This document shows positions 5,509 through 10,393 of a stretch of DNA of 64,000 nt, piece after piece. Location: IMG/VR virus record IMGVR_UViG_3300026078_000017, positions 248,001-312,000 of that record. One strand, 5' to 3'. Every line of letters starts with the position of its first letter. The first letter of the stretch is position 1. Both the position numbers and the translations under genes were made by a program. Under the pieces are notes generated by a model. It did not search any database. It worked only from the letters and a program-made list of their open reading frames with translations, and was not told the DNA's origin.

Positions 5509-5787
5509 TCAGAATGGATCCCAAGTGCTGTAGTCGTCGAGTGCGCCCTCACGCGTGCGAAACTCGTACTCCTCACACTTGATTCCGACTGCATTCCTTG
5601 CAGCCATGAATCGACGCTTGGCATCGTAGATCTTGCCAGAACCCGGATTTTCATCCGAGAACACACCAACGATCGTCACCTCACGATCTCGATGATTCTC
5701 GATGTGATACAGAACCGTCACCATCTTGGCCGGCTGTGCAGAGATTTCGGTGGATCGAATGTGGGCGATGATTGCTTCGTTCAACAT
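5509..5787 (-). CDS. hypothetical protein
   Basis: GC-rich codon usage, coupled to upstream gene. Confidence 0.65.
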   Translation of the reverse strand: MLNEAIIAHIRSTEISAQPAKMVTVLYHIENHRDREVTIVGVFSDENPGSGKIYDAKRRFMAARNAVGIKCEEYEFRTREGALDDYSTWDPF

Positions 5788-6071
5788 GTCCAGATTATAT
5801 CAGTTTCCTCTGACCCGTCAAGTACTCGTTCACCATTTCTGATAAGATGAGCCTGAGGCTTTGCCTGGTTTTGTTCATCAAAGAACACACGTTGGATCTT
5901 TTGGGCTTGCAGAGAAAAGCCAAATATGTCAAGATAAAGATCTTCCTTGTTAAGGATATACGGTGCACCCAAATCCCCAAATCTCTCAGAGTTGATTTTG
6001 GTAATAATCCATGCTACCTTCTGGCGAGGGATTACAATCAAGTCACCAACCTGAACAGAACAAAGTTTCAC
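5781..6071 (-). CDS. small SH3/KOW-like protein (GD family)
   Basis: VQVGDLIV...LIRNGERV. Confidence 0.7.
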   Translation of the reverse strand: MKLCSVQVGDLIVIPRQKVAWIITKINSERFGDLGAPYILNKEDLYLDIFGFSLQAQKIQRVFFDEQNQAKPQAHLIRNGERVLDGSEETDIIWTC

Positions 6072-6304
6072 AACGGTATTCTCTCAATTGAGCTTGCATC
6101 CCAACCAAGAATATTGTAGTGTTTGACCTTGTGGCCTAAGTGAAAATCATACACCGTAATATTTCTTCCTGGATCATTGGGATCCTCAATGTCGATGTTG
6201 TCAACAGACAACACAAGGGAATATCTTTTCCCATATTTGTGGTCTTTTTGAATGAGTATGTCACCAGGTGATACATCACGTGCAGCAAGAAGAGTTGTAG
6301 TCAC
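6068..6304 (-). CDS. small SH3/KOW-like protein (GD family)
   Basis: RDVSPGDILI...LVLSVD...GWDA; tandem paralog. Confidence 0.75.
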   Translation of the reverse strand: MTTTLLAARDVSPGDILIQKDHKYGKRYSLVLSVDNIDIEDPNDPGRNITVYDFHLGHKVKHYNILGWDASSIERIPL

Positions 6305-6528
6305 AGAGAAATCCTTTGAGTGACCTCAGCATCCCACCCATCAATAATGTTTGGCTTGTATATAACACGTTCTTGGGTGTTTAGGTCGTATAAGGTGCAA
6401 CCTGGTCTATAACTGTTGACAGGATCAAAATCAACAGACAACACCAATAGACACTTGGGACCATTCTTGAGACCTGAACGAATGAGCAGATCTCCGAGTT
6501 TTAGGTCTCTGACGGGAAGGAGTTTCAT
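6301..6528 (-). CDS. small SH3/KOW-like protein (GD family)
   Basis: RDLKLGDLLI...LVLSVD...GWDA. Confidence 0.75.
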   Translation of the reverse strand: MKLLPVRDLKLGDLLIRSGLKNGPKCLLVLSVDFDPVNSYRPGCTLYDLNTQERVIYKPNIIDGWDAEVTQRISL

Positions 6529-6530
6529 TT

Positions 6531-6665
6531 TCAGTCACAGAAATCTGCGGTGGTACACTTATTGTCACCACTGCGAAGCTTTTGCGTCACTGACAAGTCC
6601 AGTGCAGCAACCGAAACCGCACCAAGGACCAATCCAAAGAGGACACTAGCCAGAAATCCACGCAT
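6531..6665 (-). CDS. small membrane/secreted peptide
   Basis: Hand-translated MRGFLASVLFGLVLGAVSVAAL...; follows promoter TTGACG..TGCTAAGGT. Confidence 0.5.
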   Translation of the reverse strand: MRGFLASVLFGLVLGAVSVAALDLSVTQKLRSGDNKCTTADFCD

Positions 6666-6684
6666 GAGAATACCTTAGCAGGAT

Positions 6685-6975
6685 TTATTTGAACGTCAAG
6701 ACTTTTTGTGTGGGAAGCTGCATTTGCCACACATTAGGTTCACTGTCTGGATAATCAACTGAAATCCACACATGACGTTTTATTTGCGCTGCGATGTCAA
6801 GAGCAAGGTATTCATTCGCTGACAGTTTTTTCAGTACGAGGTAAAAAGTAATTGTGGTAATATGACCTGGATCTGAATACTTTCTGAGATGATCAGAGTG
6901 AGCAAGAAGCGTACCACGAACAATTCGTTTTTTGTCTATCGGAATCACTGCCGTCGTCTCAGGTGAGGAAAACAA
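6685..6975 (-). CDS. small SH3/KOW-like protein (GD family)
   Basis: VRGTLL...FYLVLK...ALDI. Confidence 0.65.
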   Translation of the reverse strand: MFSSPETTAVIPIDKKRIVRGTLLAHSDHLRKYSDPGHITTITFYLVLKKLSANEYLALDIAAQIKRHVWISVDYPDSEPNVWQMQLPTQKVLTFK

Positions 6976-7142
6976 ATATGGCGTCTGACGTGTCGAGCAT
7001 GGTAATACTGAAGCGTCCCAAGGTTTAGTTTGTTGTTGTCAACGATCCACTTTCTCTTCTGTCGAGTGACCCATTTCTTGAGCCACGAGAATGGCCCAGG
7101 TGACACGACAGAGGGTTTAGACGACTCACGATAGGGTGTCAT
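6945..7142 (-). CDS. hypothetical protein
   Basis: MTPYR start like 38785; fills operon. Confidence 0.5.
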   Translation of the reverse strand: MTPYRESSKPSVVSPGPFSWLKKWVTRQKRKWIVDNNKLNLGTLQYYHARHVRRHICFPHLRRRQ

Positions 7143-7145
7143 GGG

Positions 7146-7277
7146 TCAACGGTTCCTAAGCCATTCTAGAGCCCACACGAGCACCTCAAAGAACACTGAG
7201 AGCAGGGTGACTCCAATCAAGAGTCCAAGACACAAAAATCCGATAGAAATCAACAAGGTTACCAAAAATCCAATCAT
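7146..7277 (-). CDS. small membrane protein
   Basis: Hand-translated 43 aa hydrophobic ORF, ATGA-coupled. Confidence 0.5.
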   Translation of the reverse strand: MIGFLVTLLISIGFLCLGLLIGVTLLSVFFEVLVWALEWLRNR

Positions 7278-7564
7278 AGCGTTACCTCTTTTCCTGTTCC
7301 AATGTGGTAGATTTTCCCATCTTGAGAGAACAACAATATAAAGTCATCTTCTATGTACAGAATTTCCTTTGTGTCTTTGTTCCGTGTGAGAACGTGCTCC
7401 ATCTTCATAAATTGAAGATGTAAACCATAGATCTTAATGGCCCACTGCGAACCCATTGTAGGGTTATTGTCAACCTTGCAGATTAGCCAAGATTCCGCAC
7501 GTGGCTTGCCATAATCCAGCCAGACAATATCGCCAGGAGAAACGATAAGGTTCGCATTTGTCAC
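7274..7564 (-). CDS. small SH3/KOW-like protein (GD family)
   Basis: VSPGDIVW...WLI; GTGA overlap. Confidence 0.7.
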   Translation of the reverse strand: MTNANLIVSPGDIVWLDYGKPRAESWLICKVDNNPTMGSQWAIKIYGLHLQFMKMEHVLTRNKDTKEILYIEDDFILLFSQDGKIYHIGTGKEVTL

Positions 7565-7881
7565 GGATAACCACAATCCTCTCTGAATCGAAGTTTTTGT
7601 CCGTCGCGCAAGAGATACCACTCGTAGGCATGTGTCAAGTTAATTTTCCCAAAATTACGTGAGAAAATCAGTGTGATGGTCCGATTTTCGAGATCCAGAC
7701 ACTGGACGTGTTCACAATCCCGCACCATCACAGACGGCACAAACTCAAGAAACAAATACATTTTCTCCTTAGGTTGTGCTGCGGCTTGATACGGGTCTGG
7801 ATATTGTCGATGGACAATCACATCACCAGGAACAAGCGTTCCATCACAGAAATAAGTCACTTCTTCTCGCTGGGCCGACAT
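7561..7881 (-). CDS. small SH3/KOW-like protein (GD family)
   Basis: LVPGDVIV...YLFLE...CLDL...LLRDGQKL. Confidence 0.75.
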   Translation of the reverse strand: MSAQREEVTYFCDGTLVPGDVIVHRQYPDPYQAAAQPKEKMYLFLEFVPSVMVRDCEHVQCLDLENRTITLIFSRNFGKINLTHAYEWYLLRDGQKLRFREDCGYP

Positions 7882-7898
7882 GTACTAAAGAATAGCAC

Positions 7899-7938
7899 AA
7901 AAAGAAACGGGAGCAAACCCTTTCGAGCTTGCTCCCGC
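7899..7938 (-). terminator. intrinsic terminator after khpA-like gene
   Basis: CGGGAGCAA...TTGCTCCCG stem plus U-tract on minus strand. Confidence 0.65.
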
Positions 7939-7972
7939 GGTATGGATCCTTTTGTCTCAGGTGTCCGATAGA

Positions 7973-8257
7973 TCAGGCATCCGAAGGATCCCAGGAAAGA
8001 CGCATCGAGGTTGCCAGCCCCCAGTTCCGCGCCTGACACAGGAAAATCCTGTGAAGCGCCTTAGCGGTGTCTCCACCCTTGCCGACGATCATGGCGAGCA
8101 TCGCACGCGGGGCAACGATGTCCACGATCAGTTCACCCTCGCACGTGGGATTCTGGTGAACGCCGATGGACACCGAGTCCGGATCGTTCACGAGAGCAAG
8201 AAGCGTATCTTCCACAAGGTCACCGAAATCCTCGAAAAGCGTCTGACTGTTGCTCAT
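7973..8257 (-). CDS. khpA: KH-domain RNA-binding protein, KhpA/YlqC-like
   Basis: LVxxLLALVNDPDSV N-terminus and IVGKGGDTAKAL GxxG loop; own promoter and terminator. Confidence 0.85.
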   Translation of the reverse strand: MSNSQTLFEDFGDLVEDTLLALVNDPDSVSIGVHQNPTCEGELIVDIVAPRAMLAMIVGKGGDTAKALHRIFLCQARNWGLATSMRLSWDPSDA

Positions 8258-8350
8258 ATCTATATCCTCTTTCTATTTCTTAGAGGCGGTTTCTTGTGCC
8301 ACCTCTTTCATTTGTTTGTTTTAGCAGAATCCGACCTAAGTGCAAAATCT

Positions 8351-8527
8351 TCAGGCGTCGGTTTCTTCTACGAAATCCACTTCCCAACGCGTGGCACGAG
8401 CCTCACAGAAATCGTCTCGTTCGATCAACTCTTCTGCCAGTTCTGTAGCATGCTCGTGATCTTCCGCCTCAACCTGAAAGGTCAAGCCACGTGTGACAGT
8501 CACGGTATACGTCTTCTTTTCGGTCAT
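8351..8527 (-). CDS. small acidic hypothetical protein
   Basis: Hand-translated MTEKKTYTVTV...VEAEDHEHATELA; RBS and own promoter. Confidence 0.65.
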   Translation of the reverse strand: MTEKKTYTVTVTRGLTFQVEAEDHEHATELAEELIERDDFCEARATRWEVDFVEETDA

Positions 8528-8588
8528 ATCGTCGACTCCCTATAGATTGAAGATAGCACCAAAATCCTCAGGTGCAAGGGGAAAATGT

Positions 8589-8655: not shown

Positions 8656-8727
8656 TGGGCCATCGGGGTAACGATCCCCGTTCGTCGGATTAAAAGTCCG
8701 ATGCTTCACCATTAAAGCTTATAGCCC
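8656..8727 (-). tRNA. tRNA-Lys (UUU)
   Basis: Full cloverleaf GGGCTAT/ATGGCCC; anticodon arm TCGGA-CTTTTAA-TCCGA; atypical T-loop ATCGTTA; no encoded CCA. Confidence 0.9.
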
Positions 8728-9065
8728 TAAATCACCAAAACACCAGCATGAATCTCACCGTGACAATTAGAGCATACCAAAACGCACTTGTCAAGCTCTT
8801 CTTTTACTCGTTTCCACGACAGAGCCCAATTGCCGCTTATTTGAAATTCCTTGGTTGAGGGATCGAGATGATGAAAATGTAATGACTGTTTACATTTACT
8901 ATACCCGCAAACAATACATGAATCACCTTTGTAAGCGAAGCACTGTCGTGCTCTTTCTTTACGCCTGGCGTTGACAAGACAGGTATTACACTGCGTTTTG
9001 GTATGGCCTGCTTTTTTACTATAGCTATATGTGCGAGTGCATTGTGAACATTGATTCATGTTCAC
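8727..9065 (-). CDS. HNH homing endonuclease
   Basis: CxxC pairs, LHFHHLDP..K...KCVLVCSNCHGEIH. Confidence 0.9.
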   Translation of the reverse strand: MNMNQCSQCTRTYSYSKKAGHTKTQCNTCLVNARRKERARQCFAYKGDSCIVCGYSKCKQSLHFHHLDPSTKEFQISGNWALSWKRVKEELDKCVLVCSNCHGEIHAGVLVI

Positions 9066-9075
9066 AATTTAGATG

Positions 9076-9119
9076 AAGGCTAGAGCAATGTCTCACTCTG
9101 CCAACTGAGCTAACGCCTC
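9076..9119 (-). pseudogene. 5' tRNA fragment
   Basis: GAGGCGT-TAGCTCAGTTGGCAGAG acceptor strand and D-arm; no T-arm follows. Confidence 0.5.
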
Positions 9120-9134
9120 GAAAGAAGTTAAGTT

Positions 9135-9240: not shown

Positions 9241-9260
9241 ATCTACTTTAGCAGAAAGAA

Positions 9261-9320
9261 GTGATGAAGCAAGTAGGAAGGGACGCAGCCTGGTGCTTGC
9301 CAACCTACTCGCCTCATCAC
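9261..9320 (-). ncRNA. putative ~60 nt hairpin RNA
   Basis: 17-bp stem GTGATGAGGCGAGTAGG/CCTACTTGCTTCATCAC just after promoter 9328-9355. Confidence 0.45.
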
Positions 9321-9434
9321 AAAGAACACTTTATCACAAAACCCTAAAGGGTCAAGAGAAAAGATTGGCTGTTTATCCTCCCCGCAGCCAAGGATCACGG
9401 GACACTTTCGTATCAACCGTGAGGAGTCTTTGTG

Positions 9435-9620
9435 TCAGATCGACTCGATGAAAAGCTCGATCTGATTCTGTTGTCCGGGCGTTGCCCCTGGAACTTCTGG
9501 CATCACACGACCATGCGTGTGATGCTCGCATGCTGCCGCAACCCATGCGCGACGTTCTGCGGTGTTCGGAATGAGACTGCGAAGGAAGGTCAGACCGGGG
9601 TGAACCGTTTCGTTTTCCAT
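9435..9620 (-). CDS. hypothetical protein
   Basis: Own promoter at ~9627-9654. Confidence 0.6.
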   Translation of the reverse strand: MENETVHPGLTFLRSLIPNTAERRAWVAAACEHHTHGRVMPEVPGATPGQQNQIELFIESI

Positions 9621-9665
9621 TTGAATATCCTAGCAGGCTGAAGGATTTTGTCAAGAAGATTTGTT

Positions 9666-9790
9666 GTTGTTGGCTTGAACCGGCGCACACAAGGCAAGAC
9701 AAGAGTTTCACGTGTCACTCGCTCCCACGAGTAAAAACGCTAGGCTTCTGTCAGGGGAGATCCCCATATGCGCCCATTCAAACCAACAAC
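9666..9790 (-). ncRNA. putative ~125 nt structured ncRNA
   Basis: ~25-bp closing stem with G-U pairs on minus strand; promoter TTGACA(9825-9820)..TGCTAAAGT. Confidence 0.55.
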
Positions 9791-9976
9791 ACTCTAGACT
9801 TTAGCACCAACTTAGTTTCTGTCAAGACCTTTGTGACCTTACAACCCCGATTTATTCCTCGCACCCAAACACATTAAAGGCATTTGACATATTCGTCTGT
9901 CATAGCCCAACGTGTTGTCGGGACCATACGAGGCAGAATCTCAGGTCACAAAAAGAAGCATAGCAGAGTTTGAGGC

Positions 9977-10393
9977 TTATGCAACGTCTCTTTGAAAATC
10001 TGTCGAGCTTGCCTCAAGCATGCTAGGAATATTCAGGTGGACATTGTGCGGGAATCTGATACCAAGACGACCCGTAACCGGACAAGGGAAGATAATCCCA
10101 GATTGCCACATCACGAGCATTTCTTCAAGAAGTTCTGTCAGAATGGCACTGGACGCTTTTCGCATGCCAAACTTGAGTGGACACCTTGACACAATATCCG
10201 CGATGATCGGGTCAAAGTGCCATTTCGCGACAGTGGGAGAAATCCAGTCGTCAGTTTCGTACTCGACTTCAGTGGACCTGTCGCCTTTCAGTCTCACGAC
10301 AAAATGGACCAAATGACCATAAAGTCGGATACAGGGACGCACAGTAACATCAGACTCACACAGGGATTCAGAGAGAGACAGGAAAGTATTCAT
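9977..10393 (-). CDS. hypothetical protein
   Basis: 138 aa ORF with GGAG RBS. Confidence 0.6.
   Translation of the reverse strand: MNTFLSLSESLCESDVTVRPCIRLYGHLVHFVVRLKGDRSTEVEYETDDWISPTVAKWHFDPIIADIVSRCPLKFGMRKASSAILTELLEEMLVMWQSGIIFPCPVTGRLGIRFPHNVHLNIPSMLEASSTDFQRDVA

What the first reader, a model, noticed from the sequence alone, without database searches (positions are those of the whole stretch)
7899..8346. Phage-encoded KhpA-like RNA chaperone as a monocistronic unit
Seen: intact GKGG KH loop, own promoter, strong leader and terminator, beside the small-RNA island. Known: bacterial KhpA partners KhpB/EloR/Jag and binds sRNAs and mRNAs. Inference: it chaperones the phage ncRNAs or hijacks host KhpB.
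Basis: partly seen in the sequence, partly recalled or inferred. Interest (0 to 1): 0.6.

Follow-up and report, generated by a model that had tools for sequence, protein, structure and literature searches.

The report
Divergent KhpA-like KH protein, jumbo phage
A 320-kb soil phage carries a real, conserved early gene for a small KH-domain protein related to the bacterial RNA-binding protein KhpA, but several residues that KhpA needs for RNA binding are changed, so it may bind RNA in its own way or instead latch onto the host's KhpA/KhpB pair.

Summary
Window 7973..8257 (-) encodes a 94-aa protein under purifying selection. Its confident model is a type II KH fold, and its family aligns full-length with bacterial KhpA (hhalign 97.5%, E 5e-12). 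The gene has its own sigma70-type extended -10 promoter, a conserved 5'-UTR hairpin, a strong Shine-Dalgarno site and the strongest terminator in 20 kb.

'Monocistronic' is only partly right. The upstream 58-aa gene has its own promoter and no terminator, so read-through is likely. The 'small-RNA island' is mostly a tRNA-Lys, an HNH-like ORF and tiny leaderless ORFs.

The protein is not an orthodox KhpA:
- It scores below Pfam's threshold.
- It belongs to a rare clade (about 10 clusters in 1.84 billion representatives) seen only on phage-like metagenome contigs.
- It sits on a long branch away from 80 bacterial KhpAs, so it is not a recent host capture.
- The GKGG loop is intact, but the upstream half of KhpA's extended GxxIGxxG motif and three invariant basic residues are replaced.
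- The alpha1/alpha3 dimer face is conserved, and a homodimer is predicted (0.81 against 0.01 for controls).

Best reading: an early-expressed dimeric KH protein acting on RNA. The close rival is a KhpA mimic that captures host KhpB. The host is unknown, and nothing here was tested biochemically.

The parts
8318..8345 (-). Promoter of the KH gene. The -35 TTGCAC is at 8345..8340, a 16-nt spacer ends in TGC, and the -10 TAAAAC is at 8323..8318. It is a sigma70-type promoter with an extended -10.
   Evidence: Exact match to the recurring motif. The motif class occurs 40 times in the window against 1.3 expected. Genome-wide it is concentrated at 240-300 kb. It is conserved at the same place in L002 and L003.
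8258..8311 (-). Predicted 5' UTR of about 54 nt. The transcription start is inferred at about 7 nt after the -10 and has not been mapped.
   Evidence: 74-82% identical to L002/L003, where synonymous sites are only 30-34% identical. Alignment A7.
8282..8306 (-). Leader stem-loop with an 8-bp stem and a 9-nt A/C-rich loop.
   Evidence: dG -12.3 kcal/mol, z -4.4. Equivalent hairpins fold in L002 and L003, with two outer pairs changed on both sides between the window and L003.
8265..8271 (-). Shine-Dalgarno AAGAGGA, 7 nt before the ATG.
   Evidence: Read from the sequence. Invariant in L002-L006.
7973..8257 (-). Coding sequence of the 94-aa KhpA-like type II KH protein (P0001). GKGG is at residues 59-62.
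7897..7938 (-). Intrinsic terminator: a 14-bp stem-loop at 7938..7907 followed by a T-tract.
   Evidence: Equivalent terminators follow the gene in L002, L003, L018 and L023, but not in L021.
7889..7916 (-). Promoter of the next gene. Its -35 lies in the 3' arm of the KH terminator. The -10 TATTCT ends 7 nt before the ATG at 7881, so a leaderless mRNA is predicted.
8351..8527 (-). Upstream 58-aa gene, syntenic in the close relatives. It has no terminator before the KH promoter, so it is a likely source of read-through transcripts.
   Evidence: 47-49% identical to the upstream genes of L002 and L003. No family match.
8550..8577 (-). Promoter of the 58-aa gene.
   Evidence: Motif match.
8656..8727 (-). 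tRNA-Lys(UUU). It lies in the same order upstream of the KH gene in L002 and L003.

Best explanation
SHOWN BY SEQUENCE AND COMPUTATION
- This is a real phage gene under purifying selection.
- It encodes a single-domain type II KH protein that is homologous over its whole length to bacterial KhpA.
- It belongs to a rare, deeply divergent clade found only on phage-like contigs made of long arrays of tiny genes.
- It lies in the part of a 320-kb myovirus genome that is crowded with sigma70-type extended -10 promoters.
- It has its own such promoter, a conserved 5'-UTR hairpin, a strong ribosome-binding site and a strong terminator.

INFERRED
- The gene is expressed early by the host RNA polymerase, both alone and on read-through transcripts from the 58-aa gene upstream.
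- The protein forms a symmetric dimer through helices alpha1 and alpha3. This is the face used by KhpA and KhpB dimers. The two-fold axis lies at residue 71, which is equivalent to S. pneumoniae KhpA I61.
- The dimer binds single-stranded RNA at a composite site. Invariant T64 and R70 correspond to the T88-H94' pair of the solved T. thermophilus KhpB-RNA complex, and invariant R77 sits next to the R102 position.
- In this way the protein would act as a small phage post-transcriptional regulator of phage or host transcripts. Its own conserved leader and the adjacent tRNA are candidate ligands.
- Its RNA face is re-wired relative to KhpA, so its targets and binding mode need not be KhpA's.
For: Gene reality:
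- dN/dS is 0.12-0.28.

Fold:
- The model has pLDDT 92 and type II KH topology.
- Structural neighbours are S3 KH (Z 10.4), an Era-like KH domain (Z 10.2) and T. thermophilus KhpB 9lrg (Z 9.6, rmsd 2.3 over 78 residues).

Homology to KhpA:
- All 13 family members and intermediates hit PF13083, with a best E-value of 1e-18.
- The family profile scores 34-48 bits on bacterial KhpAs.
- hhalign gives 97.5%, E 4.9e-12 over 79 columns.
- The KhpA profile beats a size-matched KhpB-KH profile, 11-37 against 5-15 bits.
- The ESM Atlas neighbours are all KhpA clusters, with structure TM 0.80/0.88.

Dimer:
- The score is 0.81 against 0.01 for the best of 3 controls. The three runs agree in 100% of contacts, and partner pLDDT is 91.
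- In the tool's calibration the mark was reached by 20 of 30 solved homodimers and 1 of 23 monomers. I supplied my own alignment, so these counts hold only roughly.
- The interface covers residues 11-24 and 63-79, with pairs 71:71 and 70:64.
- It matches the alpha1/alpha3 interface of solved KhpB dimers and the KhpA I61 data (PMC12408800; 10.1101/435529). Numbering was checked against the 9lrg sequence.

Expression signals:
-.
Against: - No RNA binding was measured, and no RNA-seq run holds this sequence.
- Positions invariant in 80 of 80 bacterial KhpAs are different but fixed in the phage clade: G55 to A, K56 to M, R69 to H/Q. R/K63 becomes D/E in 8 of 10.
- Within the clade the loop itself is not strictly kept: K60 in 8 of 10 and the last Gly in 7 of 10.
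- Of the four basic RNA contacts of T. thermophilus KhpB, only the H94 position is basic here.
- All 10 members are acidic, pI 4.4-5.2. Bacterial KhpAs span 4.8-10, so this is not decisive.
- F. nucleatum KhpA is reported to lack RNA binding on its own (cited in PMC12408800).
- The dimer is a prediction, and it could score well from memory of solved KH dimers.
Confidence: 0.45

Rival explanations
1. KhpA mimic or hijacker. The protein keeps the KhpA/KhpB dimerisation face but has a degraded RNA face. Early in infection it pairs with the KH domain of host KhpB (or with host KhpA). This would either sequester the host pair or retarget KhpB's R3H/KH RNA binding. The result would be disturbed host post-transcriptional control, for example of cell-division or envelope genes.
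For: - The clade's most conserved residues lie in the predicted alpha1/alpha3 interface: L14, D17, A21, L22, M56, T64, A67, L68, R70, C74, N78.
- A hydrophobic residue is kept at the position equivalent to I61 (I/V/L71). That residue contacts EloR L239 in S. pneumoniae.
- The substitutions seen here in the upstream half of GxxIGxxG are of the kind that abolished RNA binding but not KhpB binding in KhpA mutants.
- No KhpB/R3H gene is present in the phage record.
- The gene sits in an early region that looks like a host-takeover region.
Against: - The host is unknown, so the presence of KhpB in it cannot be checked. By a cited survey, 48% of bacterial species have KhpA, KhpB or both (PMC11261784).
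- The same KhpA mutations also abolished homodimerisation, yet a strong homodimer is predicted here.
- The clade-specific D/E63 and R70 might favour self-pairing over pairing with a partner that carries R63 and T70. This is inference only.
Confidence: 0.3
2. The KH fold has been reused for something else. Examples are binding single-stranded DNA during replication or recombination, or acting as an adaptor for another phage or host protein. In this reading there is no link to the KhpA/KhpB network.
For: - KH domains, including T. thermophilus KhpB, bind single-stranded DNA about as well as RNA (Kd 6.5 against 7.9 uM; table in PMC12408800).
- The clade is very divergent and its conserved surface is its own: R51, R70, R77, W89 and the C-terminal L-S-W-x-P tail, which bacterial KhpA lacks.
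Against: - The gene is not near replication genes. It sits among tiny early genes and a tRNA.
- Nothing specific points to DNA or to another partner.
Confidence: 0.2
3. A recently captured host khpA gene carried as a passenger, doing what it did in the host.
For: - Canonical KhpA copies do occur in a few phage records, for example Tunturiibacter phage Tunturi_5 gp147.
- Some ESM Atlas KhpA clusters are mostly viral.
Against: - The clade lies on a long, well-supported branch (SH-aLRT 97-99) away from 80 KhpAs from more than 10 phyla.
- An exhaustive profile search of 1.84 billion representatives reached no canonical KhpA at E <= 0.001.
- There is no relative in 185,579 species genomes.
- Invariant KhpA residues are replaced.
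Confidence: 0.03
4. Not a gene: a chance ORF with a chance GxxG.
For: - None beyond its small size and the sub-threshold Pfam score.
Against: - Purifying selection.
- Conserved homologues with conserved signals.
- A confident fold.
Confidence: 0.02

Closest known systems
Bacterial KhpA (YlqC / UPF0109; Pfam PF13083 KH_KhpA-B)
   Same: - A single type II KH domain of similar size, with the N-terminal helix motif L-V-x-x-P-D-x-V.
- A GKxG loop.
- A hydrophobic residue at the position equivalent to I61 on alpha3.
- A predicted alpha1/alpha3 homodimer.
- Full-length profile-profile homology.
   Different: - It scores below Pfam's and NCBIfam's cut-offs.
- The extended motif reads A-M-x-V-G-K-G-G instead of G-K-x-I-G-K-x-G.
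- D/E replaces R after the loop, and H/Q-R replaces R-T on alpha3.
- It has an extra conserved C-terminal L-S-W-x-P-x-D tail.
- It is phage-borne, in an early small-gene array, and is not a cellular gene.
KH domain of KhpB / EloR / Jag (solved: T. thermophilus 9lrg/9lri, C. symbiosum 3gku)
   Same: - The same fold (Z 9.6, rmsd 2.3 over 78 residues).
- The same alpha1/alpha3 dimer face.
- The T88-H94' inter-subunit pair corresponds to invariant T64-R70'.
- The residue before the loop (position 56) is not a lysine, and position 69 is H/Q, as in KhpB.
   Different: - There is no Jag-N or R3H domain.
- The KhpB-KH profile scores the clade much lower than the KhpA profile does.
- Basic contacts R80, R97 and R102 are not kept at the same positions.
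Canonical KhpA-like genes in other phages (Tunturiibacter jumbo phage Tunturi_5 gp147; mostly viral KhpA clusters in the ESM Atlas)
   Same: - A small KH-only protein encoded among tiny genes of a jumbo soil phage of about 310 kb.
- It is unannotated and unstudied.
   Different: - gp147 carries the orthodox D-V-G-K-V-V-G-K-Q-G-R motif and has no pairwise similarity to P0001. It is an independent lineage.
Type II KH domains of ribosomal protein S3 and the GTPase Era
   Same: - They are the best structural matches, Z about 10.
   Different: - They are parts of larger proteins that bind rRNA.
- There is no sequence-level relationship beyond the fold.

Membership tests
KhpA (PF13083 KH_KhpA-B, KhpA type) | [quoted passage not shown] | tested here: met
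   The model has pLDDT 92 with H3-20, E30-35, E42-49, H51-58, H60-78, E84-91. KH-II neighbours score Z 9.6-10.4.
KhpA (PF13083 KH_KhpA-B, KhpA type) | Score above the curated family thresholds (Pfam 32.1 bits; NCBIfam KhpA equivalogs 106 bits) | tested here: not met
   22 bits, E 1.5e-4 in Pfam. 19 bits in NCBIfam. No PHROG match.
KhpA (PF13083 KH_KhpA-B, KhpA type) | Homology to KhpA over the whole domain at family level | tested here: met
   hhalign of 10 clade members against 80 bacterial KhpAs gives 97.5%, E 4.9e-12 over 79 columns. The clade HMM scores 34-48 bits on KhpAs. All members hit PF13083 at E <= 0.01.
KhpA (PF13083 KH_KhpA-B, KhpA type) | [quoted passage not shown] | tested here: met
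   G59-K60-G61-G62 in the window's protein. In the clade, G59 is kept in 10/10, K60 in 8/10 and G62 in 7/10.
KhpA (PF13083 KH_KhpA-B, KhpA type) | Extended motif G-K-x-I-G-x-x-G (80/80 in the bacterial sample; needed for RNA binding in KhpA, PMC13015501) | tested here: not met
   The clade has A55 (10/10), M56 (10/10) and V58 (9/10). The mutagenesis is described.
KhpA (PF13083 KH_KhpA-B, KhpA type) | Conserved basic residues flanking the loop (R/K63 in 74/80, R69 in 80/80, K/R78 in 62/80) | tested here: not met
   The clade has D/E63 (8/10), H/Q69 (10/10) and N78 (9/10). It has its own invariant R70 and R77, and R51 in 9/10.
KhpA (PF13083 KH_KhpA-B, KhpA type) | Dimerisation through alpha3, with a hydrophobic residue at the position equivalent to S. 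pneumoniae I61 | tested here: met
   This is a prediction only. The homodimer scores 0.81 against 0.01 for the best control, with contact 71:71. Position 71 is I/V/L in 10/10.
KhpA (PF13083 KH_KhpA-B, KhpA type) | A KhpB (Jag/EloR) partner in the same cell | not testable with these tools
   No R3H or second KH_KhpA-B match in the phage record, which is 81% complete. The host is unknown. The source is a rhizosphere metagenome.
KhpA (PF13083 KH_KhpA-B, KhpA type) | Binds RNA (sRNAs, mRNA 5' UTRs, tRNAs) | not testable with these tools
   No experiment was possible. No RNA run holds the sequence.
KhpB KH domain | KH domain followed by an R3H domain (with or without Jag-N) | tested here: not met
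   The protein is 94 aa and is all KH. There is no R3H in the record. The KhpB-KH profile scores 5-15 bits against 11-37 for the KhpA profile.

The most novel reading that the evidence does not exclude
A lineage of jumbo phages has evolved a KhpA look-alike that keeps the KhpA/KhpB pairing face but has given up KhpA's own RNA-binding determinants. It would be made in the first minutes of infection. It would plug into the host KhpB (or KhpA) dimer as a dominant-negative or retargeting subunit. That would make it the first viral antagonist or hijacker of the KhpA/KhpB global RNA-binding system.
Probability: 0.25. Interest if true: 0.7.

Novelty: new variant of a known kind. Interest (0 to 1): 0.45.

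Why it matters
KhpA and KhpB have recently emerged as global RNA-binding proteins in roughly half of bacterial species, often those without Hfq or ProQ. In the papers I could search, none describes a phage-encoded KhpA.

This clade is a natural experiment. The dimer face is kept, while the residues that mutagenesis ties to RNA binding are changed. That makes two questions directly testable with existing two-hybrid and three-hybrid assays:
- whether KhpA-type dimers can bind RNA by a KhpB-like composite site without the extended GxxIGxxG motif;
- whether phages target the KhpA/KhpB network.

The limits are serious. The phage is uncultured, its host is unknown and there is no expression data. 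A cultivable phage with a canonical KhpA copy, Tunturi_5, offers an experimental entry point.

Tried and rejected
- **Close relatives in public collections.** megablast and tblastn against 50,697 GenBank phages found none. Pattern scans of IMG/VR found none. A scan of 185,579 species genomes found none. These blanks say that the clade is rare, not that it is absent.
- **Sequence search of the PDB.** The 3-member profile gave only weak type I KH hits around the GxxG loop, E 0.003-1. They are uninformative beyond 'KH'.
- **Generic sigma70 scan.** It missed the promoter. The motif had to be derived from relatives and then tested for enrichment.
- **Idea that the protein is closer to the KhpB KH domain than to KhpA.** A few positions prompted this. 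Size-matched profiles rejected it.
- **Idea that strong acidity rules out RNA binding.** It is weakened because 22 of 80 bacterial KhpAs also have pI below 6.
- **Host inference.** The closest isolates by portal and sheath are Microcystis phage Mel-JY01 (40.7%) and Flavobacterium phage immuto (36%), and the DnaE-like polymerase is 25-30% identical to many phages. This is too distant to name a host.
- **Expression evidence.** The one run that holds the stretch is a DNA rhizosphere metagenome that may be the source itself.
- **Word search from P0029.** It gave only 3 relatives. Bacterial KhpAs were obtained instead from a genome scan.
- **Pfam on the neighbours.** It found nothing for the 58-aa, 61-aa and PGD-motif proteins. 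It did not confirm HNH for the 112-aa ORF.
Full report
**What is there.** The window is bases 248001-312000 of a 320,479-bp IMG/VR virus record (linear, estimated 81% complete), with GC 44.3%.
- The genome encodes a portal, tail sheath, tape measure, SbcC-like nuclease and a DnaE-like polymerase.
- Its closest isolates are only distant: the portal is 40.7% identical to Microcystis phage Mel-JY01 and 36% to Flavobacterium phage immuto.
- The one public run that holds the stretch is a rhizosphere DNA metagenome, and no RNA run holds it. The host is unknown.

**The gene.** The minus-strand ORF at 7973..8257 encodes 94 aa with I-V-G-K-G-G at residues 57-62.
- The 197-aa plus-strand ORF over it (7952..8545) is antisense noise.
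- Against four homologues, dN/dS is 0.12-0.28. Synonymous sites are 66-70% different from the two closest relatives. The gene is therefore real and constrained.

**Fold and family.**
- Pfam gives only a sub-threshold match to KH_KhpA-B (22 bits against a 32.1 cut-off, E 1.5e-4).
- NCBIfam KhpA equivalogs score about 19 bits, and PHROGs gives nothing.
- The AlphaFold model from three sequences is confident (pLDDT 92). [quoted passage not shown]
- Foldseek and VIA-align find the KH domains of ribosomal protein S3 (Z 10.4, rmsd 2.4, 86 residues), an Era-like protein (Z 10.2) and T. thermophilus KhpB (9lrg: Z 9.6, rmsd 2.3, 78 residues). These are tied within one Z unit.
- The word search found two relatives at 68-69% identity.
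- The exhaustive profile search of 1.84 billion representatives found only 27 hits at E <= 0.001. Seven were small proteins at E <= 1e-10. No canonical KhpA was reached.
- All 13 clade members and intermediates hit PF13083, with a best E-value of 1e-18.

I then collected 80 bacterial KhpAs from more than ten phyla and compared them with the clade.
- The clade profile scores 34-48 bits on them.
- hhalign gives 97.5% probability, E 4.9e-12 over 79 columns.
- A size-matched profile of nine KhpB KH domains scores the clade far lower than a KhpA profile does: 5-15 against 11-37 bits, and hhalign 92% over 49 columns against 97.3% over 74.
- ESM Atlas neighbours are all KhpA clusters, with feature score 0.85 and structure TM 0.80/0.88.
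- In a maximum-likelihood tree (77 columns, quick search), the clade plus two intermediates sits on a long branch with SH-aLRT 97-99, away from all 80 bacterial KhpAs.
- The bacterial sample is biased and lacks Actinomycetota and Cyanobacteriota.

Conclusion: the protein is KhpA-like by descent and architecture. It is an old, divergent, phage-associated lineage and not a recent host capture.

**Where the clade lives.** Every member that I looked up lies in a long same-strand array of genes of 50-130 aa on phage-like contigs. One of these is a 302-kb contig. In the two closest relatives the order tRNA-Lys, 58-63-aa gene, KH gene, PGD-motif gene is kept.

**How it differs from KhpA.** Column counts are.

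| Position (P0001 numbering) | 80 bacterial KhpAs | Phage clade (10 members) |
|---|---|---|
| 53 | D, 80/80 | E/M/Q |
| 55 | G, 80/80 | A, 10/10 |
| 56 | K, 80/80 | M, 10/10 |
| 58 | I, 80/80 | V, 9/10 |
| 59 | G, 80/80 | G, 10/10 |
| 60 | K, 80/80 | K, 8/10 |
| 62 | G, 80/80 | G, 7/10 |
| 63 | R/K, 74/80 | D/E, 8/10 |
| 69 | R, 80/80 | H/Q, 10/10 |
| 78 | K/R, 62/80 | N, 9/10 |

- The clade also has its own invariant T64, R70, R77 and W89, and R51 in 9/10.
[quoted passage not shown] This includes the upstream Gly and Lys. The motif is not needed for pairing with the KhpB KH domain (PMC13015501).
- All ten members are acidic (pI 4.4-5.2). Bacterial KhpAs range from 4.8 to 10, so this is not decisive.

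**What is kept.**
- The predicted homodimer scores 0.81 against 0.01 for the best of three controls. The runs agree in 100% of contacts, and partner pLDDT is 91.
- In the tool's calibration the mark was reached by 20 of 30 solved homodimers and 1 of 23 monomers. My own alignment was used, so these counts are rough.
- The interface is alpha1 (residues 11-24) plus alpha3 (63-79), and it holds most of the clade's invariant residues.
- It matches the alpha1/alpha3 interface of the T. thermophilus and C. symbiosum KhpB crystals (PMC12408800).
- It also matches the genetics of S. pneumoniae KhpA. There I61 on alpha3 is required for homodimers and crosslinks to EloR L239 (10.1101/435529).
- R53, R59, T60 and I61 of that protein correspond to positions 63, 69, 70 and 71 here. 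Position 71 is I/V/L in all members and makes the 71:71 contact.
- I checked the KhpB numbering on the 9lrg sequence: G83 = G59, T88 = T64, H94 = R70, R97 = L73, R102 = N78 and R80 = M56.
- The T88-H94' inter-subunit pair of the RNA-bound KhpB dimer therefore corresponds to invariant T64 and R70, which the model also puts in contact (pair 70:64).
- H94 is one of four basic residues that hold the RNA backbone in that structure. Mutating the GxxG loop (G83D) did not change its RNA binding.
- A KhpB-like composite RNA site on the dimer therefore remains plausible for the phage protein, although only one of the four basic contacts is kept in place.

**Transcription signals.**
- *Terminator.* It lies at 7938..7907 with 14 bp, dG -25.9, z -5.9 and a T-tract. 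It is the best terminator-like site in the first 20 kb of the window. Equivalent terminators follow the gene in L002, L003, L018 and L023, but not in L021.
- *Promoter.* Upstream, relatives share TTGC-N-N, thirteen bases, then TGC-TAAAAC. The general form TTG-N16-TGNTAWNNT occurs 40 times in the window against 1.3 expected, on the strand of the local genes. The TAAAAC variant with one mismatch allowed occurs 15 times against 2 expected.
- *Early region.* Across the genome, 57 of 90 matches lie between 240 and 320 kb, against 8-21 for the whole genome in shuffles. The region looks like an early block read by the host sigma70-type polymerase. This is an inference.
- *Leader.* It has an 8-bp hairpin (8306..8282) that folds in all three close relatives, with two outer pairs changed on both sides. 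An invariant Shine-Dalgarno follows. From the -10 to the ATG the leader is 74-82% identical to relatives whose synonymous sites are only 30-34% identical. It is therefore under selection. It could serve as a 5' stabiliser or as a regulatory site, possibly for the protein itself, which is speculation.
- *Read-through.* The unit is not cleanly monocistronic. The 58-aa gene has its own promoter (8577..8550), and its stop lies 6 nt before the KH promoter without a terminator.
- *Next gene.* Immediately after the KH terminator, a new promoter (7916..7889) overlaps the terminator's 3' arm. It places its -10 seven bases before the next ATG, which predicts a leaderless mRNA.

**The 'small-RNA island'.** Rfam and ARAGORN find only tRNA-Lys(UUU).
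- The stretch 8727-9065 is a Cys/His-rich, HNH-like ORF. Pfam does not confirm HNH. The block is conserved together with the tRNA in L002 and L003 at 75-78% nucleotide identity.
- The stretch 9245-9984 holds five promoter motifs.
- At least one product there is a conserved leaderless 61-aa protein, 59% identical to a called gene in L003.
- The case for a cluster of regulatory RNAs next door is therefore weak.

**Known or new.**
- Full-text searches found no paper on a phage KhpA.
- Canonical KhpA copies are rare in GenBank phages: 12 of 50,697 records, most of them short unannotated fragments.
- One is gp147 of the 309-kb Tunturiibacter jumbo phage Tunturi_5. It is annotated as hypothetical and is not discussed by its authors. 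It has the orthodox motif and no pairwise similarity to this protein.
- Phages have therefore taken up KhpA-type proteins more than once.

**Verdict.** The gene, the KH-II fold, KhpA-type ancestry, the dimer face and the expression signals are well supported (about 0.9). Function is inferred:
- RNA-binding dimer: 0.45.
- KhpA mimic acting on host KhpB or KhpA: 0.30.
- Another use of the fold: 0.20.
- Remaining readings: 0.05.

It is a new variant of a known kind and is of moderate interest.

Noticed in passing
window 1-64000; genome 240-320 kb: A sigma70-like promoter with a 16-nt spacer and an extended -10 (TTG-N16-TGNTAWNNT) occurs 40 times against 1.3 expected. Matches are on the minus strand up to about 33 kb and on the plus strand from about 39 kb. 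This looks like a divergent early region. The rest of the genome is at background level.
   Followed up: partly
window 7881 and 9620 (-); L018 and L023 downstream of their KH genes: Several small genes have a -10 box ending 6-7 nt before the ATG and no Shine-Dalgarno, so leaderless mRNAs are predicted. The one after the KH gene has its promoter overlapping the KH terminator.
   Followed up: partly
window 8727-9125 (-): A 112-aa Cys/His-rich, HNH-like ORF has no Pfam support. Its stop abuts tRNA-Lys(UUU), and the block is conserved in L002 and L003. Just upstream, at about 9125..9085, lies a stretch that resembles the 5' half of a tRNA and that ARAGORN does not call. It could be a tRNA remnant or a split or intron-bearing tRNA.
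   Followed up: partly
window 5781-7881 (-): A run of paralogous small proteins shares a P-G-D-[IL]-[IL]-V motif (7561..7881, 7274..7621, 6301..6528, 6068..6304, 5781..6071). Homologues follow the KH gene in L002 and L003. No family match was found.
   Followed up: partly
window 9245-9984 (-): Five promoter motifs lie within about 750 nt that have few ORFs. One product is a conserved leaderless 61-aa protein (9435..9620). What the other promoters drive is unknown.
   Followed up: partly
L142:2971-3243 (PP885688.1, Tunturiibacter phage Tunturi_5 gp147): An unannotated canonical KhpA-like 90-aa protein sits in a cultivable 309-kb jumbo phage of Acidobacteriota. It is independent of the window's clade.
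   Followed up: partly
G005 (genome of L073, a Deltaproteobacteria MAG): This genome has seven KhpA-type matches of 76-88 bits in open frames of 93-128 aa, plus one KhpB-like match of 46.7 bits in a 246-aa open frame. That is an unusual expansion of KhpA paralogues.
   Followed up: no
window 7952-8545 (+): A 197-aa TTG-started ORF lies antisense to the KH gene and the 58-aa gene. It is the longest ORF here but is an artefact of the opposite strand.
   Followed up: yes
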